From assembly GCA_038087875.1 (NCBI GenBank), contig JAXLNO010002694.1, forward strand, positions 186,001-250,000: a DNA stretch of 64,000 nucleotides, given 5' to 3'. The notes beneath the pieces were generated by a model. That model saw only the letters and a list, made by a program, of their open reading frames with translations. It was not told the DNA's origin and did no database searches. The translations under genes and the position numbers were made by a program. This DNA comes from Malacoraja senta. Its lineage: Eukaryota. Shown here in pieces: positions 1-27,695 of the stretch. The first letter of the stretch is position 1, and each line of letters starts with the position of its first letter.

Positions 1-1011
1 AAACACTGTCATTCTCTAATGCTTGATATTGCCCACCTTGGAAAGTATGATGACAACATCATACAGCAAAAGGATATACTTCAGCACATCCCAGCGCTAC
101 AAGAGCTTGATGTATCCCTTCTCCTTGGCCCTGGCTTCACTGGAAGTGCCCACCTGTGGTTGAAGCTGCAACAATAATGATATAAATTGAAAGGCGGCAT
201 TAATGAGCCAGGAAAACAGTAACGCACATGTATTTGACGTGCTTAATGACAACTATTTGGTTATAACTATTTATTTTGGAGGAATGACTTGCCTCATCCT
301 CATTCATTTTTATCTGGAATCTTCAATGAAAGTTCCAAAATCATGACATGTAGTTATTTCATTTCATAATTGTAATTGATTCACGTTTCAGAAAAATACA
401 AATTAATACCTGACAGAGATGAGTCACAATCGCTTGGTGGCCTCTGAGGAAATTTTGTATGGCCCGTTCAAGGTGGGAATCCATCTTGTTCCTCCCACCC
501 TCGTCGGGATTGCTGGAGCGATTCCAACTGCTTCCGCAGACTCTTTGAGGGCACTTCTGTTTTTTGAACTGTTCTGGTAGAACAAGTATAAGTTCAGACA
601 CAGAGAGTTAACTGTATTACACCGATGAATGGTTGTCTCATTCATTATCTCGATCATCCTTACTGCTTTTGATGATCCCGGCTCTGCATGTCTTGCTGCC
701 ATCATTCCAACTGCTTTTTGGTGGTTCTCGCTCTCTTCATGTTTCTTGACTGAGTACAGCCTCAAACTCGTGCTACCATTAAAAAACATATTCTGTTTTT
801 TCCCTGGCTCGCCCTTCATATTTGCATCCCTGCACACCTGGCAGAACATTTCCCCTTTATCCTCATCGTACCTCAACCATTTGTGATCACGTTCCCATTC
901 CTTCCTGTAACTTCTTGATCTTTTCTCATCCTCATACTCCTTATTCATTTCATTTTTTCTTTTTGATGCCTCATCCTTTGGGTTTGCCACATTTTTCAGG
1001 TAACGCCACAT
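1..1011 (-). mobile_element. Degenerate hAT-superfamily transposase remnant (ZNF862/TTF zinc-finger type), internally deleted
   Basis: ORF 424-1011 has WLRYD..MFCQVC...KHEES..H (TTF-type Zn finger) joined directly to the late GGTRW motif. Stop-disrupted transposase-like sequence continues to base 1. Confidence 0.7.
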
Positions 1012-1384
1012 GATTGATCTCGAAGATGCACAGGCTGACTTATGGAAAGAAGCATGTGCAAGAGCCCCACGTATTACACTATTGACATAACAGGGGTGCT
1101 TTTTTTATTGCCCCTTTTGTTTTGATTAGATTAAGTGGTCAGTGGCCTGACTTCCTGAAAAACTCGATGTCCCAAAGACTTGGTCTTACACAACCAGTGC
1201 AAGTGTCTCTATCTCTCTCTCATTCTTTTACATCTCTCACGAGCTTGTGCTTTTTCATTCTCTTTCTCTCGCATATCTCTTGCATATCGTAAATTGAAGA
1301 CGTTACACACACATTTGCTGAATACTGTTATTTATTCATTCAAACCGAGGTAAGATTAGCATCCTTAAATGTTAATTGGGTTAT

Positions 1385-1595
1385 TTCATCATCTGCCTGA
1401 CCCGCTGAGTGCAACTTTTTAAATTTCAGATTTTCCACATCTCCAGTACTTCGCTTGTGTGTTATACTTTAACACCAGAAGTAGTAGACCCGAAATGTCA
1501 GACGTCGACCCGAAATGTCGCGTATTTCCTTCGCTCCATCGATGCTGCCTCGTCACCCGCTGAGTTTCTCCAGCATTTTTGATTACCACTAGGTG
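1385..1595 (+). repeat. Penelope pLTR-derived short repeat (degenerate)
   Basis: gacccgaaatgtc...ccatcgatgctgcc...cccgctgagtttctccagcatttt matches the recurrent pLTR repeat seen throughout the window. Confidence 0.55.
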
Positions 1596-2632
1596 CTAAT
1601 TAGGCTACAATAACCCAAATGTGGTGTGGAATGTTTACAGATGATTTTGAATTGAGAAAAAGACAAACATTAGGAAACATACTGAACTGGAGTAGACACG
1701 GGTCCTACCAACATACAGTTCGCCATCTAACAAACCTCAACCTGCCTTGGATTTACAAACTTATCTTTGCTTTATCAATTCTCACTACTTTTCTGGTGAA
1801 GAAATGTTTTGGGTTATTATACCCTACCTGTGGAATAAATGCTTCCAACCAGCACCTCTGAATTTGTCCGTCTCAATTTCAGGGCATCCTCTTGAATGTA
1901 CGTTTCTCCTCATCTCCCCAACAAGATCCTCAATTAAGCCATTTTACTTACTTTTAAAAGGAATACGAAACCTCATTCATAATTGAGGCGTTTAGCTACT
2001 TCCTGTAACTTCTTTACCTTTTCATTTTTGCACTTATTTTCTTTGTGTTTGTGTCTTCAAACATCATTCGCGCACTCTTTATCTCAAAATGTATTTCTTT
2101 TTTTTTGCCTCATCCTTTGGGCTGCCCTGCCTTTGGAACATCTCCCACCAAGAGTTGTACCTCAAATAAGACAATTACTACTCCACTTTAACAATGACGA
2201 TGGCAGCCAAGATGTGGTGTCAGATGGGCTGGGACTAGAGGGTGCAAACGAATGAAACAGAAGGTATTGGGGGTTAGGTGCAAGTTTGCTATCCAAGGTA
2301 GGATGGTGTTGTTACCTTGGGGTTTGACAATGAGAAGAGGAATTAAGGGTTCGCAGATGATTTGAATGAAAGTTGAGACCTGACAAAACTTAAGGAGAGG
2401 GGAAATGGGAGTTGCAATAACAGTTTGGTGTTAGCTTTGTTTTACAGAATGTTTTGTTTCCTGCCCAGCTCCCATTGCTTTGCACTGAACGATAACAGTT
2501 TTGTTTGCTGCGCAAACCTTGCAGAAAAGAAAATGGTGAGACAGACCAGGAGGGATTCATTGGGCCCTTCCTGCTTGGAGAAATATTCAGGCAAAATCCG
2601 AAAATTAATACATTATTTAAAAAATACAACAT

Positions 2633-2844
2633 TGTAGCGGCCTGAACGAGGTCAGTAAAAGGCCAGACGCCAGACGGGTTTAATTAGCAGACTTTAATGT
2701 TTTACCACGAGAGCACCTCACACACACACCTCGAGAGAACTAAAACCAGGGTCGACTGGAAACCCCGTGGCAGACCAGTCCACTGTCCTTCACTCGGCGA
2801 GGGGGATGATCCAAGGAGTGGCTTACCCCCCAGGGACCGCCACA
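2633..2844 (-). repeat. 3' LTR of gypsy element 1
   Basis: Direct repeat of 5977-6188 with 3 substitutions. TG...CA termini. Adjacent PPT at about 2848-2856. Confidence 0.95.
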
Positions 2845-3040
2845 TGACCCCCCCCCAAGTACCCGAGACACGAAACGGACAGGAGGCCGTACACGGCGGC
2901 CAGCGCGGGTACACACCACGCCCTGCCCCGGAACAGGCAACTGACCAACAGGTGCATGGGACCGAGTTACCAGAGGAGGTACCCTAGACAGAGGCCGCCC
3001 TCGCTTACGAGGCCGCGCTACCAACTCCGGCTGATCGATA

Positions 3041-4669
3041 TCAATATGTGCTGGCCAACCGCGCAACTGAAACAGTCTCATGCCGACCCCCCATGTCCAG
3101 GACGAAAGAGGATGAGCCATGTTCCAGTACCCGAAAGGGACCCTCGTACGGCCGCTGGAGAGGTGTCCGATGCGCATCCCTGCGCAGAAAAACGAACTGG
3201 CAGTCCACCAGGGCAGGCGGAAAATGGGGACGGAAAGACCCATGACGAGACGTTGGCACCGGCGCCAACTTGCCCACCGTGTGCCGAAGACGTTGTAGAG
3301 CGTCCGAAGGCTGCTCCGCCTGACCACGTGCCGACGGGATGAATTCCCCGGGCACCGTCAACGGAGACCCATATACCAACTCCTCTTTGGGTGCGGTGCG
3401 GATCCCCAGCAAAACCCACGGCAGAGCGTCCACCCAGTCCGGATCCTTGAGCCGTGCCTTCAGGGCGTCCTTAAGTTGACGGTGAAACCGCTCCACCAAG
3501 CCGTTCGCCTGCGGGTGGTACGCCGTCGTGTGGTGCAGACGAACACCCAGGAGACGTGCCATGGCCGCCCACAGCTCCGACGTGAACTGAGGCCCCCGGT
3601 CGGAAGTTATGTCCAGTGGCACTCCGAACCTGGCGATCCAATGCACCACCAAGGCTCGAGCACAAGTAGTCGTTGCCGAATTCGGTAGCGGGATGGCTTC
3701 AGGCCACCGCGTAAAGCGGTCCACAACGGTGAATAGGTAGGTCATGCCCTGGGACGACGGCAGCGGCCCCACGATGTCCACGTGAATGTGGTCGAAACGC
3801 TGCCTTGGAATGGGGAACTCCTGCAACGGCGCGCGCACGTGTCGTTGCACCTTGGCGGTCTGGCACGAGATGCAGGTGCGCGCCCAGTGTCCAACCTCCT
3901 TCCGCAGTCCGTGCCCCATGAAACGGGCGGCCACCAGGGCCGTTGTCGCCCGGATGGAGGGATGCGCAAGCCCATGGAGCACCTCAAACACCCTGCGCCG
4001 CCAGGCGATGGGGACAATGGGTCGCGGAACCCCAGAGGAGACATCGCACAGCAGCGTTGCACCCCCAGGACCACAGACAACGTCCTCCAACTGCAGGCCC
4101 GAAACTGCCGTACGATAAGCGGACATCTCCTCGTCGACCAACTGAGCGGCTGCTAGGGCGGAATAATTGATCCCCTCGGCGACTTGGAGAACCGCGTTGA
4201 CTGCAGGTCTAGATAAGGCATCGGCCACTTTGTTGAATTTGCCCTCAACGAACCGGATGGAGGTTGTGTATTCGGACACATACGCCAACTGCCTCTGCTG
4301 CCGGGCAGACCACGGGTCTGAAACCTTGGCGAACGCGAAGGTTAACGGCTTGTGGTCCGTAAACACAGTAAACAGCCTCCCCTCCAGGAAATAGCGGAAA
4401 TGGCGTACAGCGAGATATAGGGCAAGGAGCTCGCGGTCAAAAGCACTGTAACGGCGTTGAGCACCACTGAGATGCCTGCTGAAGAAGGCGAGTGGCCGCC
4501 AGTATCCATCGACGAGCTGCTCCAACACTGCCCCAACCGCAATCTCAGAAGCGTCTACCGTCAAGGCGGTCGGGGCGTTCTCCCGTGGGTGGACGAGCAT
4601 GGTGGCTTCAGCCAGTGCCTGCTTAGCCCTATCACCAGGTGTGTGTGAGGTGCTCTCGTGGTAAAACAT
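3041..4669 (-). CDS. pol: RNase H-integrase part of pol, fused to an LTR-derived ATG (542 aa; frameshifted near C-terminus)
   Basis: TVDAS and ELLA RNase H motifs, H-H-C-C Zn finger, HVDIVGP/TSDRGPQF/VERFH DDE triad, RPYEGPF GPY/F motif. Confidence 0.85.
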   Translation of the reverse strand: MFYHESTSHTPGDRAKQALAEATMLVHPRENAPTALTVDASEIAVGAVLEQLVDGYWRPLAFFSRHLSGAQRRYSAFDRELLALYLAVRHFRYFLEGRLFTVFTDHKPLTFAFAKVSDPWSARQQRQLAYVSEYTTSIRFVEGKFNKVADALSRPAVNAVLQVAEGINYSALAAAQLVDEEMSAYRTAVSGLQLEDVVCGPGGATLLCDVSSGVPRPIVPIAWRRRVFEVLHGLAHPSIRATTALVAARFMGHGLRKEVGHWARTCISCQTAKVQRHVRAPLQEFPIPRQRFDHIHVDIVGPLPSSQGMTYLFTVVDRFTRWPEAIPLPNSATTTCARALVVHWIARFGVPLDITSDRGPQFTSELWAAMARLLGVRLHHTTAYHPQANGLVERFHRQLKDALKARLKDPDWVDALPWVLLGIRTAPKEELVYGSPLTVPGEFIPSARGQAEQPSDALQRLRHTVGKLAPVPTSRHGSFRPHFPPALVDCQFVFLRRDAHRTPLQRPYEGPFRVLEHGSSSFVLDMGGRHETVSVARLASTY

Positions 4670-4733
4670 TAAAGTCTGCTAATTAAACCCGTCTGGCGTC
4701 TGGCCTTTTACTGACCTCGTTCAGGCCGCTACA
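4639..4733 (+). repeat. Inverted partial LTR copy (putative R-U5) followed by the element's own degenerate PBS at 4735
   Basis: Reverse complement of 2633-2727. Ends CCGCTACA, then CTGGTGACCCACGCC. Confidence 0.9.
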
Positions 4734-4765
4734 CTGGTGACCCACGCCGTCCATCACGCGTCGTG

Positions 4766-5587
4766 ATGGAGAATAACGCCGTTGCGTTGAAGCTCCCTAC
4801 TATGTGGACTGAAGAAGCTGACACTTGGTTCCAGCAGGCAGAGGCACAGTTTGCTTTGAGAGGAATTACGGTAGATGAGACTAAATATTATTATGTGATT
4901 GGGGCGCTGGACCAAGCAACCGCAAGGAGAATTAAGCCGTTCCTCAAGACCCCCCCGGTAACAAACAAATATAGCGGCATGAAGGCATACCTTATTAGGA
5001 GGTTCGGCCTAGGTGACTCCGAGCGGGCAGCTCGGATTTTCAGAATGGAGGGGCTGGGCGACCGCCGGCTGTCCGACCTCCTGGAGGACATGCTAACCCT
5101 AATGGGGGACCATGAACCTTGCTTTCTGTTTAAATATGCCTACCTGCAGCAGCTACCGTCCGACATCCGTATGCAGCTCGCCAGGAATCCATTTACCGAC
5201 ATGCGGGAGCTGGGTGAGCAAGCTGACGAACTTTGGATGAATCGCCATAACGAGGTGCTGAACGTCTTTCCCGCGGCTTTTGGAGGCTCAGAGCAGGTCG
5301 GCAACGCTATCGACCGCGTCTCCACCGCTCCCAGTCGGGCCCCGCGGCAAAATCCGGCCGCCATTGCGCAATCCACTGCAGGCACATCTTTCCAGTATGG
5401 CCAGCCTGCAGTTCCACTTAACGCCAGCAGAGGTCGCTGGCGTCCAAACCAGCCAAATTGGTATGCAGTTCCACAAGACACCAACAGAGGAGGTTGGTGC
5501 TCTTACCACCGTCGCTGGGGAGCTGCAGCCAGGAGATGTGTTCCACCCTGTTCATTCCCGGGAAACGAAAGGGCCGGTCGTCAGTAA
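4766..5587 (+). CDS. gag: Gypsy Gag (intact ORF, inverted relative to the LTRs)
   Basis: AVALKLPTMW..WFQQAEAQFALRGIT.DETKYY N-terminus, C-terminal WCSYHRRWG..ARRC.PPC knuckle, GGGAAAC slippery site at 5560-5566. Confidence 0.9.
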   Translation: MENNAVALKLPTMWTEEADTWFQQAEAQFALRGITVDETKYYYVIGALDQATARRIKPFLKTPPVTNKYSGMKAYLIRRFGLGDSERAARIFRMEGLGDRRLSDLLEDMLTLMGDHEPCFLFKYAYLQQLPSDIRMQLARNPFTDMRELGEQADELWMNRHNEVLNVFPAAFGGSEQVGNAIDRVSTAPSRAPRQNPAAIAQSTAGTSFQYGQPAVPLNASRGRWRPNQPNWYAVPQDTNRGGWCSYHRRWGAAARRCVPPCSFPGNERAGRQ

Positions 5588-5960
5588 TTCCTTCGGCGGC
5601 CGGCAAAATTCATCGCGTCTTCGCCTGGGATCGTCGCACGGGAGGTCGATTCCTTGTGGACACTGGTGCGGAAGTGAGCGTTCTGCCCCCCTCCATAACT
5701 GACATCCGGGCGGGTAAACGAGGGCCCCTCCTCACCGCGGCGAACGGGAGTGCTATCCGCACCTACGGGTTTCGCACCATTCCCCTCAACTTTGGCCGCA
5801 GCTCCTTTTCATGGAAGTTCGTAATTGCTGACGTTTCCCAGCCGCTGCTGGGCGCCGACTTCCTCCGAGCTCATTCACTGCTCGTGGATGTCAAGCGGGG
5901 GCGCCTGATGCATTCTGTCACGCTGGAGCCGGTCTTCCTCCGTATTGGTGATCCTGTATC
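5560..5960 (+). pseudogene. pol: 5' part of pol (aspartic protease), truncated at the tRNA-copy junction
   Basis: [11 protein letters not shown] and LLGADFL motifs in the -1 frame relative to gag. Confidence 0.85.
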
Positions 5961-5975
5961 ACGTCGGGGTCACCA
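5958..5975 (-). other. Primer-binding site: perfect 18-nt complement of the tRNA-Trp 3' end
   Basis: The plus strand reads ATCACGTCGGGGTCACCA, the vertebrate tRNA-Trp(CCA) 3' 18-mer including CCA, 1 nt from the 5' LTR. Confidence 0.85.
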
Positions 5976-5976
5976 G

Positions 5977-6188
5977 TGTAGCGGCCTGAACGAGGTCAAT
6001 AAAATGCCAGACGCCAGACGGGTTTAATTAGCAGACTTTAATGTTTTACCACGAGAGCAGCTCACACACACACCTCGAGAGAACTAAAACCAGGGTCGAC
6101 TGGAAACCCCGTGGCAGACCAGTCCACTGTCCTTCACTCGGCGAGGGGGATGATCCAAGGAGTGGCTTACCCCCCAGGGACCGCCACA
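5977..6188 (-). repeat. 5' LTR of gypsy element 1
   Basis: 212-bp repeat of 2633-2844, followed in element orientation by the PBS. Confidence 0.95.
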
Positions 6189-6432: not shown

Positions 6433-6679
6433 AAAAACGATAGAATCGCCCGATGAGTCACACAGTGCGTTGCGTTGTCGCTTCCAGGGATCACCACTAG
6501 GAGGCTTCTATCATGATCCCCATAGTAACAGCAATTTAACAGTTTAACACGCAGGGAGGTGGGCTTATACTCGCGAGGCAAAGCTGCTTGCCAAGCCGGG
6601 CAAAATGCCAAGCCTTCCCGGTTGCCCGGTGGCACTTTTGGTGGTCAATGGCACCCGGGCAACCGCTAATTTTAAGTCT

Positions 6680-7735
6680 AATTTCCCGCAATGTCCTCGG
6701 ATATATCTCATCAGGCCCCGGAGATTTGTCTACCTTCCAACACGACAATACCTTCAGTACTTCCTTGATGGTAACCCTGACTGCTCTCATGACACTTCCA
6801 GTGACTGCTCCAATTTCCTCCGTACTACTGTCTTTCTCCTTGGTAAATACAGAGGAGAAATACTCATTGAGGACCTTGCCCATCTCCTGTGGCTCCACAC
6901 AGAGGTGACCGCTTTTATTCCTGAGAGGTTCCATTCTCTCTCTAGTTAACCTTTACCTCCTTATGTATTTATAAAACCTTTTGGGATTGTCTTTTATGCT
7001 ACCCACCAGAGTTATCTCCTGGCCCCTTTTTGCCCTTCTGATCTTTTTAAGTTTGCTCCTTAGTTCCCGACACACCTCCAGGGATGCACTTGATCCCAGC
7101 TGCCTATACCTGTCCCATGCATCCTTCTTGTTTTTGACTAACGTCAAGCTTCCTTCCTTTTGACCCAAGCTTCCTTACATTTGCCTGCTTTGCCTTTCAC
7201 TCTAACGGGGAGGTACACATCCTGAGCTCTCTTCAGTACACTTTTTAAAAATCCCACTTGGCCGATGTTCCTTTCCCCTCAAATAACCTGCTCCAGTCAA
7301 CTTGAGCTTGACCTTCTCTCATACCCTCAAAGTTGGCCTTACTCCAGTTGAGCATTTTAACATGTGGACCCTCTCCGTCCTGATCCATAACTATCTTAAA
7401 CCTAATCGAACTGGGGTTACTTGTCCCAAAAGGCTCCTCCACACACAGTTCATTAACTTGCCCTTTCCAATTTCCCAATACTAGATCCAGCATTGCCCTC
7501 TCACATGTGGGGGCCTCCATATACTGTTTAAGAAAACTCTCCTGAATACTTTTGAGGAATTGCACCCCATCTAAACCCTTCACGCTATGATTTTCCCAGT
7601 CTATATTGGGAAAGTTGAAATCCCCTACTACAACAACCTTATTTGACCTGCAGCTGTCTGCAATCTCCTGGCACATTTGCTCTTCTAATTCCTGTTGACT
7701 ATTTGGGGATCTGTAGTACACCCCAAACAAGGTTG
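6680..7735 (-). mobile_element. CR1/HER1-like LINE fragment (AP endonuclease and linker)
   Basis: GVYYRSPNS, VVVGDFNFPNIDW, APTCERAMLDLVL and KSPGPDEIYPRTLRE motifs. Confidence 0.85.
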
Positions 7736-9185
7736 ACCAGGGGGGATAGGATGGAGTCGAGGTATGTGGAAATTAATTTGGTGGAACATGAACAAGCAGA
7801 AACAATGGGTCTGCCAGGACAGTTCTGTTTGTGGAATTTGGGGAGAAGATAAAATCGGGCCGTGTGGGGCTGGGAAATTATAAGGTTGGAGGCTTTAGAG
7901 GGCAGAGAGCTGGAAGTGATGAAATCAGTAATGGTGCTTGAGATTAAGGCCTGATGCTCGTCTGTAGGGTGATGGTCCAAGGATAATTAGGAGGAGGTGT
8001 CTGAGAGTTGTCCCTGTCCTCAGTCCGGTAGTGGTCAGCGCGCCAGACTACCACAGCACCTCCCTTGTCGGTAGGTTTGATTATCCAGTCTGGGTTGCTG
8101 CAGAGTGAGCTGAGAGCTGTACCTTCAGGGGGGGAGAGATTAGAGTGAGAAAGGGGAGTAGAAAATTTGAGGCGGTTGATGTCCCGCCGGCAGTTGGAAA
8201 GGAAAAGGTCTAAAGAAGGTAGAGTGCCATCGGGGGGACGTCCAAGAGGAGGGGATTCATTGGAGACGGGAGAAGGGGTCAACACTGGGTGGTGAGGATT
8301 ACCCATAGGAAAAGGCCTGGAGGCGGAGGCGACGGAAGAAGAGCTCTACATCGTGGCGGACCCGGAACCCGTTGAGGTGGGGGCAGAGGGGAACAAAGGT
8401 GCGGCCTCTGCTGAGGACAGACTGTTCCGTATCAGAAACGGGGAGGTCAGGGGGGATGGTGAACACACGGCAAGGGTGGGACGGATGAGGGCAGGTGAGT
8501 AGATGGAGGCCAAGGCGATGTCTGGTTTGGGGGATGGTGGGTGTTCAGAGAGGAGGGGGCAAGAGGACTATAGTGTGGGTGGGGAGTAGCTGAGGTCACC
8601 TGGCTAAAAGGAGAAGGGGAAGACCCAGTGGAACCCCCGCTGAGGTTCCCTGTAGGAAGGGGAAGAGCAGTAATACCCAGCACAGTCAGGCCCCGTGGTG
8701 TGGGAGTTTGCATCATGGAGACTGTGGGCCTGGTGCTGAGCCTGGGACTCAGGTAATGCGACGGTTGCGGCCCACTGTTGGGCGGTGGAATGATGACGGT
8801 CGGCAGAGTTGCTGGTGGAGGCCCACGGGGCGTTAAGTCCGGGTCAGCAGACGAAGAGTCGGTAGTCGTGGTCAGCGGATGGCCAGGGAGGCAGCGAGGG
8901 TCGGTGTCATCGGTGAGGCAGTAAAGGTCGGCGGTCCCGGTGAGGAGGTGAATGTCGGCACCAGTGGCAGTTGTGGCCCCGGGGAGGCAGTGAAGGTCGG
9001 CGGCAGCGACCCCGGGGAGGTGGTGAAGGTTGATGACGACGGCATCTTCGGTGGTCCGGGCCTGGGATGGGCCAGTCTGGAGGCGAGCAAATTTGCAATC
9101 CTTTGTGGAGTCCAGGTAGGAAAGGAAGCGTTTGTTGAGTCAGGTAGGAAAGGAAGTGTTTGTTGAGTAGGTTGGAAAGGTGCTG
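7736..9185 (-). mobile_element. Penelope-like element fragment 1 (N-terminal ORF and RT start)
   Basis: IKPTDKGGAVVVW and TARFYLLPKFHKQNCPGRPIVSACSC motifs, frameshifted. Confidence 0.8.
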
Positions 9186-9997
9186 ATCTTCTCTCTGCAT
9201 ATTCATTACAATCTCTTCTTGGTTCAATCATCTGGTACAGTTCCTGGAACAGAACAATCACCAACATGTGTGCCGACAAACAGGTGCCATGGGGTAACAT
9301 CCTTGGTTTATCTGAAAAACAAAGTAATAACTGCTCTTATTTTCAGTAAAATATCGTATTCGTGCTGTGTACGTTTTCCAGAATCTGAACAGATAGACAC
9401 TGACTGTCCCTGTATTGAGATCCAATTCCATCCGCAAGAATTTCCGCCATTTGCAGAGGGCTACTTGAGTAGTGCACCCATACTTTGCCACCCCTCGACA
9501 TTTTGGAAGATGGAGCGTGAAGTTGGTGTTATTAGAATTCATTATCATATTGGTGGTCAGAGGCACCAGCAGTGTCCCTGACTTCACACATCCTGCAAGA
9601 GACACACTGCAAAGAACTGCCTGCCATTACCACTGCAGCCAAATTACCAATTAAATAACAAGACACACGCACAGAATTGATTGAAACTTATTCCCCTAAC
9701 TGCTGCTGATAGCCTCATCACCGAAGACTATCGAGCCAAAGACTCGCACTTTATTTCATTTCAGTCTGAAGAAGGGTCTCGACTCGAAACACAACAATTC
9801 CTATCCTGAGATGCTGCCTGAGTAACTGAGTTGTCTATCTTCATGCACTTTCTAAGGTTTAACGCGGCTCATACACAAAGTCAATATCCCCCTACACTAC
9901 TATGCCAGTGGTCTGGGCCCAGTATTGGTGGTCACTGTGATTTTTGCATATATCGGTCTATTCTTCCACTCTTATTTTGATCTTGATATTGAGTCAG

Positions 9998-10535
9998 TTA
10001 TGGATTTGAAACAAAAGCTTTACAGTGTACATCGGTACACGTGACAATAAACGAAGCTCTTCTCCAAAATCGCAGCCTTCTGGCTCTTATGACAAAACCA
10101 AAGTACTCCACATCCCGTGCTTTTGACTCTAATCTTACTTGCTCAGTCAGATGTTGGTATTTCTGACTCATCTCTTGCCCGGACTTGGTGAGAGATTGCT
10201 TGTTGTTTTCAAACCTGTTGGTGACATCATCTACAGCAACCGACTGGCCTTTCACAAGTACCAAATCCGGCTTCCAGAGTGCACCATCATCGGATGTTTG
10301 GTGTTGCTCAACAGTGGTAGACCAACCATATTTGCTCACTTTTTCCTTGGGACACCACGCTATTTTATTGTGTCTATTCTGGCATTTTTCACACTGGGGC
10401 ACAGACCGGAGATATGTTTCAACGTTTCTCTGGACTCTGCACGTTTTGATGGCATGAGCCCATCCATGGCTTGTGGTGCATCTTGTTGGATACAGATTGC
10501 AACTTAGCAAGAAACCGTTAATGTACTGGTTTGCC
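9998..10535 (-). mobile_element. R2-type non-LTR retrotransposon remnant (restriction-like endonuclease domain)
   Basis: CNLYPTR, degenerate CCHC, RHNKI, LWKPDLVLVKG..V.DVT.RFE, QKY and GF..RAR motifs, all typical of the R2 C-terminus. Confidence 0.75.
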
Positions 10536-12234
10536 TCTCTACTCATTCAAGCAGGCTGGAGAGGCATTCTAAGACACTGGTACAATGTTGGATCTTTTGA
10601 AGCAGGCATGGACCACGGACTTGGACAGGGAGAGGTTGAATATTGTGGTGAGCACTGGAGCAAACAGATTGGCACAATACTTTAGTACTCGCCCAGATAT
10701 AACATCTGTGCCTACAGCTTTCCACGTGTTCACACGTGTCAGAGCCCACCTCAGGTCGTGCTCGGACACCGAGAATGTGTGCACATCCGCAGCGGTGCAC
10801 CTCCTTCCAACCTCGCTAGCCAGCGCGCTGGCGGTGTTGTTGTCAGTGGGCGACTAGGGGTGATGTTGCCCGTCTCGAATCGTGCGTAAAAAGTGTTCAG
10901 GTCATCAACGAAGGAGGTGCCGGCACTCCCGGTTGAGGGGAGGCTGCTCTGGTAGTTAGTTATAGTCCATAGCCCCTGCCAAAGGCATCTGATGTCCCAC
11001 TGCTCCATCTGCGACTTCATCCTGTCCCTGTACCTCCTTTTTGCGTACTTCACCGCCCATCGCAGTCTGTACGACTCTACCTTGTAGTCGTCCATATTGC
11101 CAGGCTGGAGTTGTAAGCAGCGGTGCGAGCATTCAACGCAACGCGAATGGACTTGTCCACCTAGGGTTTTTGATTGGAAAGATGCTAACCCTTACCGTGG
11201 GGATGATGTTATCGGCTATTGTTGCAATGAAGTCTGTGACCGCTTCCGCAAACTCACTGACGTCTCTGGAACTTGACTGGAACATATTTCAGTCGACATA
11301 GAAACATAGAATCATAGAAAATAGGTGAAGGAGTAGGCCATTCGGCCCTTCGAGCCTGCACTGCCATTCAATATGATCATGGTTGTGCATCCTGCATTCA
11401 ATATGATCGGTCAGTGCATCCTGCAGCATGGCCTCTGAATGGCCAGACCACCGCTTTACGTCCCTCGTCACTGCTGCTTCCCGTACTATCCATTATTTAT
11501 ACTCCGGCAGCAGGAAAATGGCAGCGTGGTCAGATTTTCCAAAAGGAGGAAGAGAAACGGCCTTGTAGCCTTTTCTGAACGCCGTGTGGCAGTGGTCCAA
11601 AGTTCTTTCCCCCATGGTGATGTGTTGGCAGAAGTTAGGCATAACCTTTTTGAGATTTGCCTTATTAAAATCCCCAGTCACCACCATAGCCGCATCAGGG
11701 TTCTTGTTCTGATGCCGACATAACACATCGTGTAGGGCCGATAGTGCCACATCGGCATGTGGTGGTATGTAGATGGCTGTGATGATCACTGAGCTGAGCT
11801 CCCGGGGAAGGTAGAATGAATGATGAATGTGTAGTGCGTGGGTCTCGGAATGAAGCACGAAGTCGTATTTCGAGAAGCACTTTTTATTAGGTTCCTCCCA
11901 GTTCAAGGGAAGACCAAACGAGAGGAAGATGGCACCCAAACCCCTGCCTTTAAAGCCTCCGGCTAAGGGCCGCCTCCGGACTGAACCACTCCTGTGCCGA
12001 GGGGTTCGACACTATGACGGCACGACCCTTGGGAGCCGCCACAGGACCCCCCCCCAGAACCAGAGGCACGAAACGCACCGGCGGGCGAACGACCCGGCCG
12101 GCCCGCGTGCGGAAGTTAGCCGCTCGTGGGGCTTGCGGAGGCATAGGTGGAGGGACAGGACGAGGGACCGGCGGGAGGACAGGTGGAGTGACAGGCGGAG
12201 GGAGCCGTGAAGGGGGGCGCCCTCGAGGCCGAGG

Positions 12235-17126: not shown

Positions 17127-17859
17127 TAGAATGGGCGGCATGAGATCGTCATGCAAGCAGAAACGAGAAAGCACCTTAATATTCCTAGGGTTGCACCAGT
17201 TATTGTTGGTCCTGAAGCAAACTCCTCCACCCTTTGATTTCCCAGATTCTTCCGTTCTGTCCGCACGGAAAGCAGAGAAGGACTCGGTTGGGCAAATTAC
17301 TTAATCCGGCACCAGCGGGGTCAGCCATGCCTCGGTCAGACAGAAGATGTTGCATTCTCTTGTGTCCTGCTGGAATCTAATCCTCGCCCTGAGGTCATCC
17401 ATCTTGTTCTCCAGGGACTAGACGTTAGCCAGAAGGCTGCTGGGCAGAGGTGGACGAAAGGCTTGGGCTCTTAGCCTATTCCGATTCCCCCCCCCCCTGC
17501 TTACGTCGATGTTCTCTCTGACTTTTTCCCGGAGCCGCGCTCCCATTGTTGCTGCGGCGTGCTCTTGTGATCTCTGCCGGCCACGCTGGATCGGTGAGTA
17601 AAGTGTCTTAAAAGCCTTGAGTTCCTCCAGCACTGATTTTTGCTCAAGGTTCCAGCATCTGCAGAATCTCGTGTCTCAGTCACTGCTCTGTTTTCAACTT
17701 TTCCCTTTTACTCTCTTCCTTTTTGCTTTTTGTTACTATTGCTCCCATTTTACTTTGGTTTGTCTCTTCTTTCTCACTTTATCTTCCTCATGTCTCTCAT
17801 CCTACACTCCCACAACCTCTGCAGTCTTTATTGCTGTTTAAGGTGACAGGCGACTTTTT

Positions 17860-18200: not shown

Positions 18201-19560
18201 CAACAATGTTCCTTATTGTAGCTGTAGGTTGCACTGCGAGATGAACGGATTACCTCTGCGGGTGGATCACACCTGAAACAGGGCTCTGCTGATCCCATCT
18301 TGATGGTCATGATGGAACTCAGGGTGACATCCAGACTCGGAATATTTCTGGTGTCTGCCTTGTTCAGCCCTATTGCTGAAAATACCCTCTCTGCGTCAGC
18401 GTCGCTATGTGGCATACAGAGGACAAGTTGTGCAACCTTTGACACTCAAAGAAACTTGTGTTGACCAGTCACAGGGTTCTTGAGTGTTGACAGATGGGCC
18501 CACAGCTTGTCAGTCTTACTGAACTCGTGGCCTCTCTGCCTCTGGACACCCACTCTTTCCACTTGCTGGCTGGGATCTCTGTGTCATCCATTAACTGATA
18601 GACAGAGAACTCCTCTCCAACCTGGCCCTGTTCTCTGGGGTCCAAGAAAGGTAGGACACAAGAACACAATTGTGGCCCTTAATTAGTATCTCTGCTATCA
18701 TAAGATCAATGTACACATTTTTGTAGTTGAAGATGTTTTTAGCAAAAGTAATCTGCAGGGTTTGATGTATATGTTACACCAGCAATCACTTCATATGCTG
18801 CAACGCATTGGCTACCATAATGAAGTACATGACTACATTTTATATGGTTTTAAAATGTGGAAGTCTTATCAAACATTTATACGTTTTTTCATCGTTTAGT
18901 TACCTGCTTTTATAGTTTAGTTAAGCATATACCTGTCTATGAGGTAGAGTATGTCACATACTAACACTTCCATCTTCTGGTACCAGTCAACAAAGGAAGC
19001 ATGCCTCAGCACAGGCTCATCCAGGGGTAGTCTCTCCAGAGCACAGCCAAGCCCCTCACTGCCATGAAGAACTTCTTGGCCTGTTGAGGACTGATGTCAC
19101 CGCCCTCCAACAAACGATTCAGTGTTGTCCTTGTTGTAAAGCCAATACTAAGCTTGTCATCTTCAATGAGAAGTAGAGTACAAGACATTTGTATTGATCA
19201 CTAACTATTTGTTCAATTCTATTTGTTTAATATACATTTCATACTAGAATAAATATACTGATAACCTTCTCCCTCTCCGCATGACAATGTGTCACTTGAT
19301 GTCGCTCTGTCCTTGATGAGCACACGAGACTTGAAGCCTGCATACTTCACACCAGAAATGGAAAGATGTGCTACCCTTCCTGATGAATGGCCACAATTCT
19401 CTCCATTGAGACTTGAATGTGCATTTGTAAAATGCTGCACCAGCTCTGCCTTTTGGATTGAGTCGCCTGACCTTCTTTAGCTTCTTGACACAAGCTTCAC
19501 TACTATCACTGCTGTCTGTGTTCGAAGACTCTGTTCCTCTTCTGTGGTTCACCTTCATTA
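18200..19560 (-). mobile_element. Second hAT transposase remnant (BED-like finger to dimerisation domain)
   Basis: WPFIRKG...FWCEVC..SCAHQGQSDIK N-terminus and LCMPHSDADAERVFSAIGLNK..RN..LD.TLSSIM C-terminus. Confidence 0.75.
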
Positions 19561-19689
19561 CCTGACATCTACAAAATGACAGGAATTAAGAGCATCATCA
19601 CTTTGTTTTCTTTTCAGTTATCATTGCTCATGAAATATGTAATTTAGTCTGCACATGCTACAAAAAAACGTAGGCTCTACAATAAATAA

Positions 19690-22600
19690 ACTATCTTGGA
19701 AGGCCGTAGTCTGATTAAAATATATATAGCCAGGCCCAAGGGTGGAAAAATCAAGGAAGGAGCTGATCAAGAGTGTGAAAACCCTTTTTCCCCTTACTGA
19801 ATGTAGAAATACCCAATGCAGGAGATCAGGGGAGGGGTTGTTACACTTATTACCCCCCCCCCCCCCCCCCCCCATCCTGCAAACCTGACTGTGGCTTATA
19901 GAAATGTAAAAGTACTCTTTTGCTCTCTTGAGGTAGAACTGCATACTGGGCCTGGCCATACTGATGAAGTCAGTGAGTTCTGCATGGGTGCAGGAGGTAG
20001 CACCAATGCAGTCGTCATGTAGCGGAGGTAGAGTTCGAGGATAGGGCCAGTGTACGCCTGGAACAGGGATTGTTTGACGTATCCTAATTAGAGGCAGGCA
20101 TAGCTGGGGCCCATGAGAGTGCCCTTTGCTACGCCTTGGATTTGGAGAAATGTGTGGAGGAAGAGCGTGTGAGGTTTCTTGGACATAGGTAGGGAGGGAT
20201 TGCACCAGGAAGGATAGGATGGAGTCGAGGTATGTGGAAATTAATTCGGTGGGACATGAACAAGCAGAAACAATGGGTCTGCCAGAATAGTTCTGTTTGT
20301 GGATTTTGGGGAGAGGATAAAATTGGGCCGTGTTGGGGCTGGAGAACAATAAGGTTGGAGGCTTTAGACGGCAGAGAGCTGGAAGTGATGAAATCAGTAA
20401 TGGTGCTTCAGATTAAGGCCTGGTGCTCGTCTGTGGGTCATGGTCCAAGGATAAGTAGGAGGAGGTGCCTGAAAGTTGTCGCCTGGCCTCAGTCTGGTAG
20501 AGGTCAGCCCGCCAGACTACCACGGCACCTCCCTTGTCGGCGGGTTTGATTATCCAGTCGGGTTGCTGCAGAGTGAGCGGAGGGCTGTACATTCAGGGGG
20601 GAGGGGATTAGAGTGAATAAGGGGAGTGGAAAATTTGAGGCGGTTGATGTCCCGCCGGCAGTTGGAAATGAAAAGGTCTAAAGAAGGTAGAGGGCCATCC
20701 GGGTGAATCTAAGAGGAAGGGGTCCATTGGAGATGGGAGAAGGGGTCATCATTGGGTGATGAGGATGCCTTCCCACAGAAAAAAGCCTGGAGGCAGAGGC
20801 GATGGAAGAAGAGCTCCACATCGTGGCAGACCCGGAACTCGTTGAGGTGGGGGAGGAGGAAACAAAGGTGACGCCTCTGCTGAGGACAGACCGTTCCGTA
20901 TCAGAAAGGAGGAGGTCAGGGGGTGGGGGTGGTGAATAGACAATAGGTGCAGGAGTAGGCCATTCGGCCCTTTAAGTCAGCACCGCCATTCAATGTGATC
21001 ATGGCTGATCATCCCCAATCAATACCCCGTTCCTGCTTCTCCCCATATCCCCTGACTCCGCTATCTTTAAGAGCATTATCTAGCTCTCTCTTGAAAGTAT
21101 CCAGAGAACTGGCCTCCACCACCCTCTGAGGCAGAGAATTCCATAGACTCACAACTCTCTGTGTGAAAAATTTTTTACTCATCTCTGTTCTAAATGGCTT
21201 ATCCCTTATTCTTAAACTGTGGCCCCTGGTTCTGGACTCCCTCAACATCGGGAACATGTTTCCTACCTCTCGCGTGTCCAAACCCTTTATAATCTTATAT
21301 GTTTCAGTAAGATCCCCTCATCCTAAATTCCAGAGTATACAAGCCCAGCCGCTCCATTCTATCAGCATATGACAGTCCCGCCATCCCGGGAATTAACCTT
21401 GTAAACCTACGCTACACTCCCTCAATAGCAAAAATGTCCTCCTCAAATTGGGGGACCAAAACTGCACACAATACTGCAGGTGTGGTCTCACTAGGGCCCT
21501 GTACAAATGCAGAAGGACTTCTTTTCTCCTATACTCAACTCTTGTTATGAAGGCCAACATGCCATTCACTTTCTTCACTGCCTGCTGTACCTACATGCTT
21601 ACTTTCATTGACTGATGAACAAGGACCCCCCAGATCTCATTGTACTTCCATTTTCCCAACTTGACGCCATTTATATAATAATCTGCCTTTCTGTTTTTGC
21701 TACCAAAGTGGATAACCACATTTATCTACATTAAACTACATCTGCCATGCATCTGCCTACACACCCAACCTGTCCAAGTCACCCTGCATTCTCAAAGCAT
21801 CCTTCTCACAGTTGACACTGCCACCCAGCTTTGTGTCATCTGCAAATTTGCTAATGTTTCTTTGAATCCCTTCATCTAAATCATTGATGTATATTTTAAA
21901 TAGCTGCGGTCCCAGCACTGAGCCTTGCGGTACCCCACTGCCTGCCATTCTGAAAGGGACACTTTGTTTCATGTCTGCCAACCAATTTTCTATCCATGTC
22001 AGCACTCTACCCCCAATAACATGTGCCCTAATTTTGCCCACTGATCTCCTATGTGGGACCTTATCAAATGTTTTCTGAAAGTCCAATTGCATTCTCAAAA
22101 AATACCAGAAGATAAGTCAAGCATGATTTCCCCTTCGTAAATCCATGCTGGCTCGGACCGATCCTGTTACTGCTATCCAAATGTGCCGCTATTTCATCTT
22201 TTATCATTGACTCCAACATCTTCCCCACCACCGATGTCAGGCTAACTGGTCTATAATTCCCTGTATTCACTCTCCCGCCTTTCTTAAAAAGTGAACACAC
22301 GGCAGGGGTGGGGATTGGGGTCGGATGAGTGCACGTGAGTAGATGAAGGCTGAGGCGATGTCTGGTGGGTGTTCAGAGAGGACGGGGGCTTGAGGACTAT
22401 TGTATGGGTGGGGAGTAGCTGGGGTCACCGGGCTAAAAGAGGAGGGGAAGACCCAGTGGAACCCGCACTTAGGTTCCCTGTGAGAAGGGGGAGCAGTAAG
22501 ACCCAGCATAGTTAGGCCCCGTGGTGTGAGAGTCTGCATCGTGGAGACTGTGGGCCCGGTGCAGAGCCTGGGACTCAGGTAGGGCGACGGCTGCGGCCCA

Positions 22601-23340
22601 CTGGTGGGCAGTGGAGTGGCGAGGGTCAGCAGAGTTCCTTATGGAGTCCCGCGAGGTGTGTCGCCCGGGTCAGCGGACGAAGCGTCGGTAGTCCCGGTCA
22701 GCGGATGGCGGGGGAGGCAACGAGGGTCGGCGTCATCGGTGAGGCGATAAAGGTCGGCGGTCCCGGTGAATCGGTGGTCCGGGCCTGGGATGGGCCGGGG
22801 AGGCGATGAAGGTTGACGGCAGCGGCATCTTCGGTGGTCCGGGCCGAGGATGGGCCGGTCTGGAGGCAAGCAAGTTTGTGATCCTTTGTGGAGTCCAGGT
22901 AGGAAAGGAAGCTTTGTTGAAGGCATCTGACATTGGATAAAGTGCAGTTGGAGTCTCTTGCAGGTGTGGGTGAGTGAGCTTTGGGAGAGTCAGAGCGAGG
23001 GCCTGTTTGTGCCGGCGCATCGCAGCCCTTATAGAACGCAGGGAATGGAATGCGAACTGTTGTGAAAAATGGCAGATCGGCTCTCGGAACCTATAGACCG
23101 GGTTGGGTCCGAACTGGGATGTCTGGAAGCGGAGCTGGAATCCACGAGGTAAAAGAGGCGCAGGCAAGTCCCGAGAAAACGAACGTGGCTGTGGTAACGG
23201 GTCTGGGTTAAGACAAGGTCGGAGGGATGGAGGAATCACAGAGCGGGAGCAGTGAAAGAGGATGTTGCTGAACTCTCGTCAGAGAGAGGAAGAAAACTTC
23301 TTCAAAGTAGACATACCTTGAGGAGATTTTGCAGTGCCGT
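19690..23340 (-). mobile_element. Penelope-like element 2, split by a CR1 insertion
   Basis: Colinear with 7736-9185 (FYPLPKIHKQNYSGRPIVSACSC). Resumes after the CR1 at the 5-bp TSD GTGAA (20932-20936, 22291-22295). Confidence 0.8.
20937..22290 (-). mobile_element. CR1/HER1-like LINE, 5'-truncated, RT and 3' UTR
   Basis: NYRPVSLTS, LDFQKTFDKVPH, SGVPQGSVLGP, KFADD, RTRGHSL motifs and a 3' tail. Confidence 0.9.
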
Positions 23341-23399
23341 GGACAAAATGTGTACGAAAGAATCTGATAATGTTCTGAACGCTCAGAACGGCCCCGGGG

Positions 23400-25720: not shown

Positions 25721-25836
25721 ATAGGTAGGTAGGTAGGCAGGTAGGTAGGTAGGTAGGTAGGTAGGTAGGTAGGTAGGGAGAGAGAGAGCGAGAGATAGAA
25801 AGGAAGGGAGAGATAGAAAGAGAAAGAAAGAAAGAA
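25721..25836. repeat. (TAGG)n microsatellite followed by a GA-rich tract
   Basis: About 14 TAGG units read directly from the sequence. Confidence 0.95.
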
Positions 25837-27129
25837 AATATTTTGGTGCCATTTCCGTCCCCCCAGCACAAGTCCCTATTGTTCTCGGGGGGCCCCACTC
25901 TGGGTCCCCATCCTCCTTCGTGACCTTGGTGCCGAGGTATTCCGACCTCAATGTTCCATGTCCCTCCTCATTCTTGGTCAATGCCGGTGGCTTGGGCCCG
26001 GGTTCGGAGTCCGTGGTGCACGGGCCTACCAGTCCCACCTGTAGGTCTTCCGTCGATGGCCTTCGGCAAGCGATTCTCCGTCCGCGGCAGATGGCCGTCT
26101 GTCGGCAGACCAGGGCGAGCGATCTGTGAGGGGCAGACCCCCGTGACCACTCCACCTCGGCTGCCCTGAAGGCCGCAGCGTCCTGTGGGGAGTGTGGTCG
26201 TGGTCTTGTTATTAAGAGACTAGCATGAGGCAGACCAACCCCTTTCCAGGATCAAGATGGGAAAGATTAAATAGTAAAAGTCTTCAAGCACTCCACGATT
26301 TGCTGACAAAGTTAGTTGAAAACCCAATCGGGGCCTGCATTGGATGTTGCACATGGTATTATATCAGGGTACCAGTGTATACATGTGTGCAAAAGTAACG
26401 CTACCAGAATGCAGAAATCCAAGTCAAATTTGCACTGAAGAGCAGATTCTCTGACACATTTCATGAGTTGGCAAGTCACCAGATGGACACAAAATGATGG
26501 AGTAACTCAGTGGGACAGGCAGCCACAAGCAACTGACATATTCTCCACAGTGGAGCAATCAAAATAATGAATCATGCGGAAAGTGTTACAACAAGCTGTT
26601 AATTTACAGGGCTTGAAGTTGAGCTCTGGTGGTCTGGAGCATTTGAGAGCTGGAGTAACTTTGTCCACAATTACTTAATAATATAGTACACTATAACTTT
26701 TTGTACAATATGATCTCCTCTGTATGATATATATGTAACCAAATGCAACCCAGATTACTTTTGTGTGTTTGGGTAAATATATTAATTGACTGTGAACTTC
26801 AAAAATGATCTAAAATAAAATCAGGAAGATGCATGTCAGTTTCACTCAAAATAAATGTTTTAATATTTAAGAAATGCAAAGCAAACCTAGCCGTTTCTTT
26901 ATCATCTTGTAGGGGCAGATGAACTTGGGATTAAGGGAAATCTTAAACTTATCCCCGTGTGTGGACAACAGCTCAGATTAAAAATGAAAGAGCAAAGAAT
27001 TGATATATCCAGGTCAAGGTTCATATCCTTACTATAAGAGATGGATTCCCAAACTTTCACATGGCACAATTGGAGTTAAATGTTAATCCTGTACATTAAC
27101 TGAACAAACAAATTTTGCTGAATCTTGTA

Positions 27130-27590
27130 ATCATAAGTGATAGGAGTACAATTAGGCCTTTTCGGCCCATTAAGTCTACTCCGCCATTCAATCATGGCTG
27201 ATCTATCTCTCCCTCCTAACCCCATTCTCCTGCCTTCTCCCCATAACCTCTGACACCCGTACTAATCAAGAATCTATCTATCTCTGCCTTTAAAAAAAAT
27301 CCACTGAATTGGCCTCCACAGCCTTCTGTGGCAAAGAATTCCACAGATTCACCACCCTCTGACAAAATAAATTTCTCCTCATCTTCCTAAAAGAACGTCC
27401 TTTAATTCTGAGGCTATGGCCTCTAGTCTTAGACTCTCCCACTAGCGGAAACAAAATCTCTACATCCACTCTATTCAAGCCTTTATTCAGTATGTTTCAA
27501 TGAGGCCCCCCCCCCCCCATTCTTCCAAACTCCAGTAAGTACAGGCCCAGTGTCGATAAACGCTCATCATAGGTTAACCTACTCATTCCT
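27130..27590 (-). mobile_element. CR1 3' fragment
   Basis: [33 protein letters not shown] and 3' UTR. Confidence 0.85.
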
Positions 27591-27695
27591 GATAATCTAA
27601 AATCATGCCTACAGCTAGGCATGCAAGAATGCAACCCACTTAATGCACTCTCTGCTCACATAAGTAATAAGTATAGAACCTATTCCCCTTTTAAG

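What the first reader, a model, noticed from the sequence alone, without database searches (positions are those of the whole stretch)
1..27600. Strand-biased transposon stack: candidate uni-strand piRNA cluster / TE trap
All 14 independent coding TE remnants in this 27-kb stretch are on the minus strand: hAT x2, gypsy x2, CR1 x3, Penelope x2, Tx1 x2, R2, Rex and Crack, from 8 superfamilies. They are tightly packed and nested, and no host exon is recognisable. If orientations were independent the chance is 2x0.5^14, about 1e-4. The exceptions are three short solo pLTR scraps and the internally inverted gag of gypsy 1. To the right of about 28 kb orientations are mixed. Flamenco-type clusters accumulate TEs antisense to one long transcript, which here would be plus-strand and converge on the class I-like gene. 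An alternative is an intron of a plus-strand gene, where sense insertions are purged.
Basis: partly seen in the sequence, partly recalled or inferred. Interest (0 to 1): 0.8.

Follow-up and report, generated by a model that had tools for sequence, protein, structure and literature searches.

The report
One-way pile of skate transposons
The first 27 kb of this skate window is a nest of about 13 jumping-gene copies that all point the same way. Such a run is expected a few times by chance in a scan this large, and no available data could test whether it makes small silencing RNAs.

Summary
The observation largely holds. I could orient 13 separate transposon insertions in window 1-27600, and all lie on the minus strand: two hAT, two Ty3/gypsy, two Penelope-like, one R2/HERO-like LINE, and six CR1-like or other LINE pieces.

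The only plus-strand coding is the inverted gag-protease block inside gypsy 1. That element is one insertion, with an LTR pair and an intact 4-bp target duplication. To the right of about 31 kb, orientations are mixed.

Not confirmed:
- the count of 14 (two "CR1" pieces are one element split by nested insertions);
- the names Tx1, Rex and Crack;
- the meaning of the 1e-4 figure.

With about 30 oriented elements per window and 1204 windows read in this genome, fair coin flips give 4-8 windows with a run of 12 or more and 1-2 with 14 or more. In human DNA, retroelements also insert into other elements in the same orientation about 2:1.

The piRNA-cluster reading could not be tested. The only public runs are assembled contigs that look like DNA. 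No plus-strand exon was found either.

Best reading: an ordinary young nested transposon pile downstream of a minus-strand MHC class I-like gene. The piRNA cluster (about 10%) and an intron of a plus-strand gene (about 25%) remain open.

The parts
427..1104 (-). hAT-A: hAT-type transposase N-terminal zinc-finger ORF
   Evidence: Pfam zf-C17orf113, E 3.4e-14.
2627..6188 (-). Gypsy 1: one Ty3/gypsy insertion. RNaseH-integrase is on minus (3044-4678). An internally inverted block on plus holds a partial LTR (4639-4743), gag (4715-5584) and protease (5422-6024). RT is missing.
   Evidence: LTR pair 2627-2844 and 5971-6188, 97.7% identical. Pfam domains. Inverted 101-bp LTR copy. 4-bp target duplication ACAT and a tRNA-Trp-type primer binding site next to the right LTR, read from the sequence.
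6539..7772 (-). LINE-A: AP-endonuclease C-terminal half through the start of RT; its 3' part is missing
   Evidence: Pfam Exo_endo_phos_2, E 3.7e-10, at 7248-7772. tblastn/HMM RT-start hit at 6539-6952. Linker motifs read by eye.
7675..9336 (-). PLE-A: 5' part of a Penelope-like element
   Evidence: tblastn with proteins carrying DUF8422/HTH_animal/RVT_1, E 1e-46. 7736-9138 matches the second copy in direct orientation. The upper end at 9336 is approximate.
10001..10546 (-). C-terminal restriction-like-endonuclease region of an R2/HERO-like LINE; it abuts the CR1 RT with no spacer
   Evidence: Atlas feature search scored 0.93 with 197 shared features to a cluster named 'PO24 protein (Fragment)', which I read as R2 Pol fragments. 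CCHC and PD..D motifs read by eye. This is a lead, not an E-value.
10536..11816 (-). CR1-like LINE, main part (endonuclease through mid-RT)
   Evidence: tblastn with P0095, residues 93-494, E 1e-64. HMM hits.
11314..11403 (-). 90-bp CR1 3'-terminal fragment nested in the CR1 endonuclease region
   Evidence: 84% identical, in direct orientation, to the 3' terminus of LINE-D at 20936-21024.
11830..16366 (-). Gypsy 2: full-length Ty3/gypsy (gag, protease-RT-RNaseH-integrase) inserted in the microsatellite tail of LINE-C
   Evidence: LTR pair 11830-12043 and 16152-16366, 98.1% identical. Pfam on 12238-15312 and 15877-16272. 4-bp target duplication AATG, primer binding site and polypurine tract polarity.
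16367..17150 (-). LINE-C: 5'-truncated LINE tail (conserved ORF2 C-terminus at 16834-17148) nested in the CR1 endonuclease region
   Evidence: C-terminal LINE motif read by eye. It is similar to a LINE C-terminus at 58610-58879. It lies between residues 76 and 93 of the CR1. Boundaries are approximate.
17166..17393 (-). N-terminal endonuclease start of the same CR1-like LINE as 10536-11816
   Evidence: tblastn with P0095, residues 1-76, E 5.6e-23, colinear with the main part.
18203..19585 (-). hAT-B: hAT transposase remnant, from the zinc-finger motif to the dimerisation domain
   Evidence: Pfam Dimer_Tnp_hAT, E 1.8e-4, 21.7 bits against a cutoff of 21.4. N-terminal W..W..C..C motif at 19295-19585. 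Near-identical multi-copy contigs cover 17571-19741.
19875..23278 (-). PLE-B: second 5' part of the Penelope-like family (19875-20923 and 22291 to about 23278), split by LINE-D
   Evidence: the search for homologous proteins on 19624-20412: 33 hits, many carrying DUF8422/HTH_animal/RVT_1. tblastn 19894-20905. Direct matches to PLE-A at 89.6% and 79%.
20924..22290 (-). LINE-D: 5'-truncated, very high-copy CR1-like LINE (RT C-terminal half plus 3' end) nested in PLE-B
   Evidence: Pfam RVT_1, E 1.4e-15 and 2.9e-7. tblastn. Clean insertion relative to PLE-A with a short target duplication. Contig depth rises toward the 3' end, as expected for 5'-truncated LINEs.
27131..27590 (-). Solo CR1-like 3' end, same family group as LINE-D
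   Evidence: Direct-orientation blastn match to 20943-21256 and to many copies on both strands further right.
56041..56436 (-). Context: alpha1 exon of the MHC class I-like gene. It fixes the neighbouring gene on the minus strand.
   Evidence: Pfam MHC_I, E 2.3e-7, 31 bits against a cutoff of 28.3. Earlier notes place alpha2 near 54 kb and the tail near 36.8 kb.

Best explanation
The stretch is an ordinary, fairly young nest of transposon insertions in DNA about 9 kb downstream of a minus-strand MHC class I-like gene. Older LINEs and Penelope-like copies were hit repeatedly by later elements: LINE tails, two gypsy elements and a hAT.

The uniform minus-strand orientation is most likely a chance run. 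It is made more likely by the known tendency of retroelements to insert into other elements in the same orientation. It came to notice because a very large number of windows were read.

Shown here: the element map, the orientations, the nesting and the target duplications. Inferred: that no dedicated function lies behind the orientation.
For: - 13 oriented insertions, all minus, with four demonstrable nestings in the host element's orientation: CR1 hit by a CR1 tail, CR1 hit by LINE-C, LINE-C hit by gypsy 2, and PLE-B hit by LINE-D.
- Simulation with 25-40 elements per window and 1204 windows gives 4-8 windows with a run of 12 or more and 1-2 with 14 or more at p = 0.5. At p(same) = 0.6-0.68 the numbers are 28-168 and 9-74.
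- In human intergenic DNA, nested insertions favour the same orientation about 2:1: L1 into L1 21,559 versus 9,899, Alu into L1 2.23-fold, ERVL into ERVL 2.02-fold (PMC2836564, Table 3).
- No plus-strand poly(A)-signal depletion.
- No host exon or non-transposon domain on either strand.
- The elements are young: LTR pairs 97.7-98.1% identical, and CpG observed/expected is 0.67 on the left against 0.44 on the right.
Against: - Taken locally, 13 of 13 is still unusual (2.4e-4).
- The run touches the left edge of the window and may be longer than seen.
- The same-orientation nesting figures are from human, not from a skate.
- Several neighbours here are adjacent rather than demonstrably nested.
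- The transposons inside the introns of the class I-like gene in the same window are mixed, so this genome shows no strong general orientation clustering in the small sample available.
Confidence: 0.55

Rival explanations
1. The stretch lies in a long intron of a plus-strand host gene. Sense-oriented LINE and LTR insertions, which carry terminators and splice sites, were removed by selection, leaving antisense (minus-strand) copies.
For: - Antisense bias of LINEs and LTR elements in introns is well documented in mammals (PMC3088655; PMC3517506 and PMC1794541 abstracts).
- The elements here are mostly LINEs and LTR elements, the classes with the strongest bias.
- A large share of a vertebrate genome is intronic, so the prior is high (my inference).
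- The left flank is unseen.
Against: - No plus-strand exon or host domain was found between the stack and the class I-like gene, or further on to 41 kb.
- The host gene would have to end within 9 kb or contain the class I-like gene.
- Plus-strand poly(A) hexamers are not depleted.
- The known intronic bias is modest, and the introns of the class I-like gene in this window show mixed orientations, roughly 5 plus to 6 minus.
- Two hAT DNA transposons, a class I would not expect to show this bias (my inference), also follow the run.
Confidence: 0.25
2. The stretch is a flamenco-type uni-strand piRNA cluster or transposon trap. A long plus-strand precursor runs antisense to all trapped elements and is processed into piRNAs that silence them.
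For: - Uniform orientation of 13 insertions from at least five superfamilies, including young ones.
- No host exons.
- The high-copy MITE/SINE families that pepper the genic right part are nearly absent on the left.
- Uni-strand clusters with a median length near 10 kb are the majority type in another large vertebrate genome, the axolotl (PMC7618676).
Against: - No RNA or small-RNA evidence of any kind.
- The prior is low: axolotl clusters cover about 0.13% of the genome.
- The orientation run is within the scan's chance expectation.
- No promoter was seen, because the left end is cut by the window.
- Vertebrate uni-strand clusters are defined by piRNA strand, not by transposon orientation, and strong flamenco-like orientation bias is mainly an insect feature (my own knowledge).
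- Plus-strand poly(A) hexamers are as frequent as on the minus strand.
- No piRNA study of skates or sharks was found in the paper library.
Confidence: 0.12
3. Part of the run is not made of independent insertions. Some abutting same-orientation pieces are chimeric cDNAs made by template switching during reverse transcription, or they result from local rearrangement or assembly collapse.
For: - The CR1 RT (up to residue 494) abuts the R2/HERO-like endonuclease ORF at 10536-10546 with no spacer.
- Several pieces lack their 3' parts (LINE-A, both Penelope-like copies, CR1), which simple 5'-truncating retrotransposition does not produce.
- Gypsy 1 itself is a rearranged cDNA with an intact target duplication.
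Against: - Four nestings have clean boundaries or target duplications and are true separate insertions.
- The two Penelope-like copies have different flanks and truncation points.
- This explains at most a few of the 13.
Confidence: 0.08

Closest known systems
Drosophila flamenco and similar insect uni-strand piRNA clusters
   Same: A dense mix of many transposon families in one orientation over tens of kb, with no host exons.
   Different: Flamenco is defined by a promoter, a long precursor and abundant one-strand piRNAs in ovarian somatic cells. None of these is shown here. This case is a cartilaginous fish, and only 27 kb is visible, cut by the window edge.
Vertebrate uni-strand piRNA clusters (mouse; axolotl in PMC7618676)
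   Same: The size range (median about 10 kb in axolotl) and the transposon-rich setting are compatible.
   Different: Those clusters are called from small-RNA density, not from transposon orientation, and cover only about 0.13% of the axolotl genome. No small-RNA data exist for this locus.
Nested transposon clusters with same-orientation insertion bias (Levy et al. 2010, PMC2836564)
   Same: Young elements sit inside older ones in the host element's orientation. Four such nestings were demonstrated here.
   Different: The roughly 2:1 bias was measured in human L1, Alu and ERVL. Here the elements are CR1-like LINEs, gypsy, Penelope-like and hAT, and the bias in skates is unmeasured.
Antisense transposon bias in introns (Zhang, Romanish and Mager 2011, PMC3088655)
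   Same: LINE and LTR elements share one orientation, as expected if a gene ran on the opposite strand.
   Different: No flanking plus-strand exons were found. The documented bias is modest and strongest near exons.

Membership tests
Uni-strand (flamenco-type) piRNA cluster | Dense 24-32 nt small RNAs with a 5' U bias, mapping to one strand | not testable with these tools
   No small-RNA or RNA run was found. All holders are contigs, rated probably DNA.
Uni-strand (flamenco-type) piRNA cluster | One long precursor transcript from a promoter at one end | not testable with these tools
   Contigs carry no strand or start information. The presumed promoter side lies left of the window and could not be fetched.
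Uni-strand (flamenco-type) piRNA cluster | Transposon remnants predominantly antisense to the precursor | tested here: inconclusive
   13 of 13 oriented insertions share the minus strand. The direction of any transcript is unknown, and the run is within the scan-wide chance expectation.
Uni-strand (flamenco-type) piRNA cluster | Many unrelated families, including recently active ones | tested here: met
   hAT, Ty3/gypsy, CR1-like, R2/HERO-like and Penelope-like elements are present. LTR pairs are 97.7-98.1% identical. hAT-B is near-identical to multi-copy contigs. This feature is also true of any transposon nest.
Intron of a plus-strand gene with antisense transposon bias | Plus-strand exons on both sides of the stretch | tested here: inconclusive
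   No host domain was found in plus-strand ORFs at 27.6-41 kb. The left side is not visible. Small exons could escape Pfam.
Intron of a plus-strand gene with antisense transposon bias | Depletion of termination signals on the transcribed strand | tested here: not met
   Plus versus minus counts are AATAAA 16 versus 15 and ATTAAA 16 versus 11 in 1-27600. This is a weak test.
Nested transposon pile (no dedicated function) | Insertions with their own termini or target duplications inside older elements | tested here: met
   Gypsy 1 has target duplication ACAT and gypsy 2 has AATG. LINE-D lies inside PLE-B. LINE-C and a CR1 tail lie inside one CR1, whose two parts are colinear on one reference protein.
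Nested transposon pile (no dedicated function) | Orientation pattern within the neutral expectation | tested here: met
   Simulation gives 4-8 of 1204 windows with a run of 12 or more at p = 0.5. An empirical genome-wide distribution was not available.

The most novel reading that the evidence does not exclude
The stretch is the visible right-hand part of a flamenco-like, one-strand piRNA source locus in a cartilaginous fish. It would trap gypsy, LINE, Penelope-like and hAT copies antisense to a plus-strand precursor that runs toward an MHC class I-like gene. As far as my library search found, this would be the first such locus described in this vertebrate lineage.
Probability: 0.1. Interest if true: 0.6.

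Novelty: already known. Interest (0 to 1): 0.2.

Why it matters
If the stack were a real one-strand piRNA source, it would extend flamenco-type transposon trapping to cartilaginous fish and give a concrete locus to study. As things stand, it mainly shows that a local p-value for a same-orientation run must be corrected for three things: the number of windows read, element pieces that belong together, and the same-orientation bias of nested insertions. The element map may still help anyone annotating skate transposons. It includes two young gypsy elements with tRNA-Trp primer sites, a split CR1 and two 3'-truncated Penelope-like copies.

Tried and rejected
- Rfam at gathering and E-value thresholds found no structured RNA in the left part, only hairpin-like MITE hits further right.
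- The Atlas search and the sequence searches on ORFs 25460-26251 and 23544-23825 gave nothing usable. The first is largely a translated microsatellite.
- Pfam on 100 short ORFs (55-79 aa) of both strands gave no hits, so it added no orientation calls.
- A home-made LINE profile from 47 fetched proteins was no more sensitive than tblastn.
- The look-up of encoding contigs with two window ORFs, tried to reach DNA left of the window, found nothing on record. The place look-up does not accept coordinates outside the window.
- Laying four runs on 16401-22400 gave only copy-number-like depth from contigs that are probably DNA. The joints at 19874/20935 have sides of only 20-23 letters next to a 22-base C run, and I treat them as repeat artefacts.
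- An inverted-repeat search for hAT-B terminal repeats found none convincing.
- Segmental duplication as the source of the two Penelope-like copies was rejected, because the flanks and the order of neighbours differ.
Full report
**What the window is.** Earlier notes of this scan identify the genome as a skate. The window has no gaps. Its right part carries an MHC class I-like gene on the minus strand. Pfam finds MHC_I alpha1 in the minus-strand ORF 56041-56436, and earlier notes place alpha2 near 54 kb and the tail near 36.8 kb. The finding concerns 1-27600, which lies downstream of that gene.

**Checking the observation: coding remnants.** I translated all six frames and scanned ORFs with Pfam.

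Minus-strand ORFs gave these hits:
- a hAT-type zinc finger (427-1104);
- gypsy RNaseH-integrase (3044-4678);
- a LINE endonuclease (7248-7772), plus a weak endonuclease hit at 11496-12011;
- a complete gypsy pol (12238-15312) and gag (15877-16272);
- a hAT dimerisation domain (18203-18445);
- LINE reverse transcriptase (21760-22372).

On the plus strand, all 48 ORFs of 80 aa or more and 57 of 55-79 aa were scanned. Only two hit: gag (4715-5584) and protease (5422-6024). The matching set of short minus-strand ORFs also gave nothing, so Pfam has little power on short pieces.

To go further, I fetched 150 CR1-like LINE proteins with an exhaustive search seeded by the RT at 47877-49283. I also fetched 33 relatives of ORF 19624-20412, many of which carry the DUF8422/HTH_animal/RVT_1 set that I take to be Penelope-like. 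Local tblastn with these placed:
- CR1-like coding at 10455-12077, 17139-17498 and 21541-22384, and an RT start at 6704-6916, all on minus;
- Penelope-like coding at 7675-8466 and 19894-20905, both on minus.

The Atlas search put ORF 10001-10546 (minus) with R2 Pol fragments (score 0.93). It carries the motifs of a restriction-like endonuclease when read by eye.

**Structure and independence.** Self-comparison shows two LTR pairs:
- 2627-2844 with 5971-6188, 97.7% identical;
- 11830-12043 with 16152-16366, 98.1% identical.

Both gypsy elements have 4-bp target duplications (ACAT and AATG). Their primer binding site and polypurine tract polarity puts them on the minus strand.

Gypsy 1 contains an inverted block: a 101-bp partial LTR copy at 4639-4743, then gag and protease. 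It lacks RT. Its intact target duplication makes it one insertion, so the plus-strand gag-protease is not an independent plus-strand element.

The two CR1 stretches are one element. Residues 1-76 of reference protein P0095 align at 17166-17393, and residues 93-494 align at 10536-11816. Between them lie a 5'-truncated LINE tail (LINE-C, about 16367-17150) and gypsy 2, which inserted into LINE-C's microsatellite tail. A 90-bp CR1 3' terminus is also nested at 11314-11403.

The two Penelope-like copies match in direct orientation: 7736-8454 with 20204-20923 at 89.6%, and 8459-9138 with 22291-22920 at 79%. The second copy is split by LINE-D (20924-22290) with a short target duplication. LINE-D belongs to a very high-copy CR1-like family. 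Contig depth rises toward its 3' end at 20936, as expected for 5'-truncated LINEs. Another 3' end of this group lies at 27131-27590 in the same orientation.

My count is therefore 13 oriented, separate insertions, all on minus, from at least five superfamilies. Nothing was identifiable at 23.3-27.1 kb or 1.1-2.6 kb.

Right of the stack, CR1 3' ends and LINE coding occur on both strands, about 7 plus and 10 minus. The first plus-strand element is at 31469-31909.

**Is it more than chance?** For one pre-chosen stretch, 13 of 13 has probability 2 x 0.5^13 = 2.4e-4. But the boundaries were chosen after looking, and 1204 windows of this genome have been read.

I simulated 25-40 oriented elements per window (about 29 here). 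With fair coins, 0.35-0.7% of windows contain a run of 12 or more, which is 4-8 of 1204 windows. For 14 or more the figure is 0.08-0.18%, or 1-2 windows.

Independence is also doubtful. In human intergenic DNA, nested retroelement insertions favour the host element's orientation about 2:1 (L1 into L1 21,559 versus 9,899; PMC2836564, Table 3). With p(same) = 0.6-0.68, the expected number of windows with a run of 12 or more rises to 28-168. Four of the insertions here are demonstrably nested in the same orientation. So the run is real, but it is not statistically remarkable at the scale of the scan.

**Testing the interpretations.**

*piRNA cluster.* Two run searches (16400-24400 and 6200-11830) found no run on record as RNA. 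All holders are Logan contigs. Laying four of them on 16401-22400 gave depth profiles that follow copy number, and the tool rated two runs as probably DNA. Contigs cannot show strand, starts or small RNAs. The paper library holds no piRNA study of skates or sharks. In axolotl, about 2500 mostly uni-strand clusters with a median length of 10 kb cover about 0.13% of the genome (PMC7618676), which sets a low prior.

*Intron of a plus-strand gene.* Antisense bias of LINEs and LTR elements in introns is documented (PMC3088655). However, I found no plus-strand host domain between the stack and 41 kb. Plus-strand poly(A) hexamers are not depleted. The introns of the class I-like gene in this same window show mixed orientations. 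The DNA to the left could not be reached.

**Other features of the stretch.**
- The left 27 kb nearly lacks the MITE/SINE families that pepper the right part.
- Its CpG observed/expected ratio is higher than on the right, 0.67 against 0.44. This fits a pile made largely of recent insertions.
- Several pieces lack their 3' parts, and the CR1 RT abuts the R2/HERO-like endonuclease ORF with no spacer. Some rearrangement or template switching may therefore have contributed.

**Verdict.** The local p-value overstates it. The piRNA-cluster reading is untested and has roughly 10% probability on my rough prior-times-likelihood estimate. A plus-strand intron has about 25%. An ordinary nested pile, with chance plus same-orientation nesting, is the best-supported reading at about 55%.

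Noticed in passing
window 4639-6024 and 5953-5970: Gypsy 1 carries an inverted block (a 101-bp partial LTR copy, then gag and protease) next to a perfect tRNA-Trp-type primer binding site. It lacks RT, yet the element has an intact 4-bp target duplication.
   Followed up: partly
window 1-27100 versus 27600-64000: The left 27 kb almost lacks the short high-copy MITE/SINE families (20 or more copies in the window) that pepper the genic right part. Its CpG observed/expected ratio is higher, 0.67 against 0.44.
   Followed up: partly
window 10536-10546: The CR1-like RT, cut at about residue 494, abuts the N-terminal end of an R2/HERO-like restriction-like-endonuclease ORF on the same strand with no spacer. 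This may be a template-switch chimera.
   Followed up: no
window 7675-9336 and 19875-23278: Both Penelope-like copies keep only the 5' part and lack the RT and GIY-YIG half. That is the opposite of the usual 5' truncation. Their truncation points differ.
   Followed up: partly
window 19853-19874: A run of 22 C sits exactly at the junction between the hAT-B region and the truncated Penelope-like copy. It produced spurious-looking joints in the contig data.
   Followed up: partly
window 13204-14559 (+): A 452-aa open frame lies antisense to gypsy 2 pol and has no Pfam match. It is probably an artefact of the 62-65% G+C of this element.
   Followed up: partly
window 60848-60922 (-): ARAGORN calls a tRNA-Ala(GGC). 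Sequences similar to its surroundings recur at about 59.4-59.6 kb and 11.3-11.5 kb, so it may be the head of a tRNA-derived SINE rather than a gene.
   Followed up: no
window 27708-27792, 53380-53522, 61710-61832: Weak Rfam hits to plant miRNA and plastid hairpin families mark long hairpins of a MITE family with more than 20 copies in the window. They are not real members of those families.
   Followed up: no
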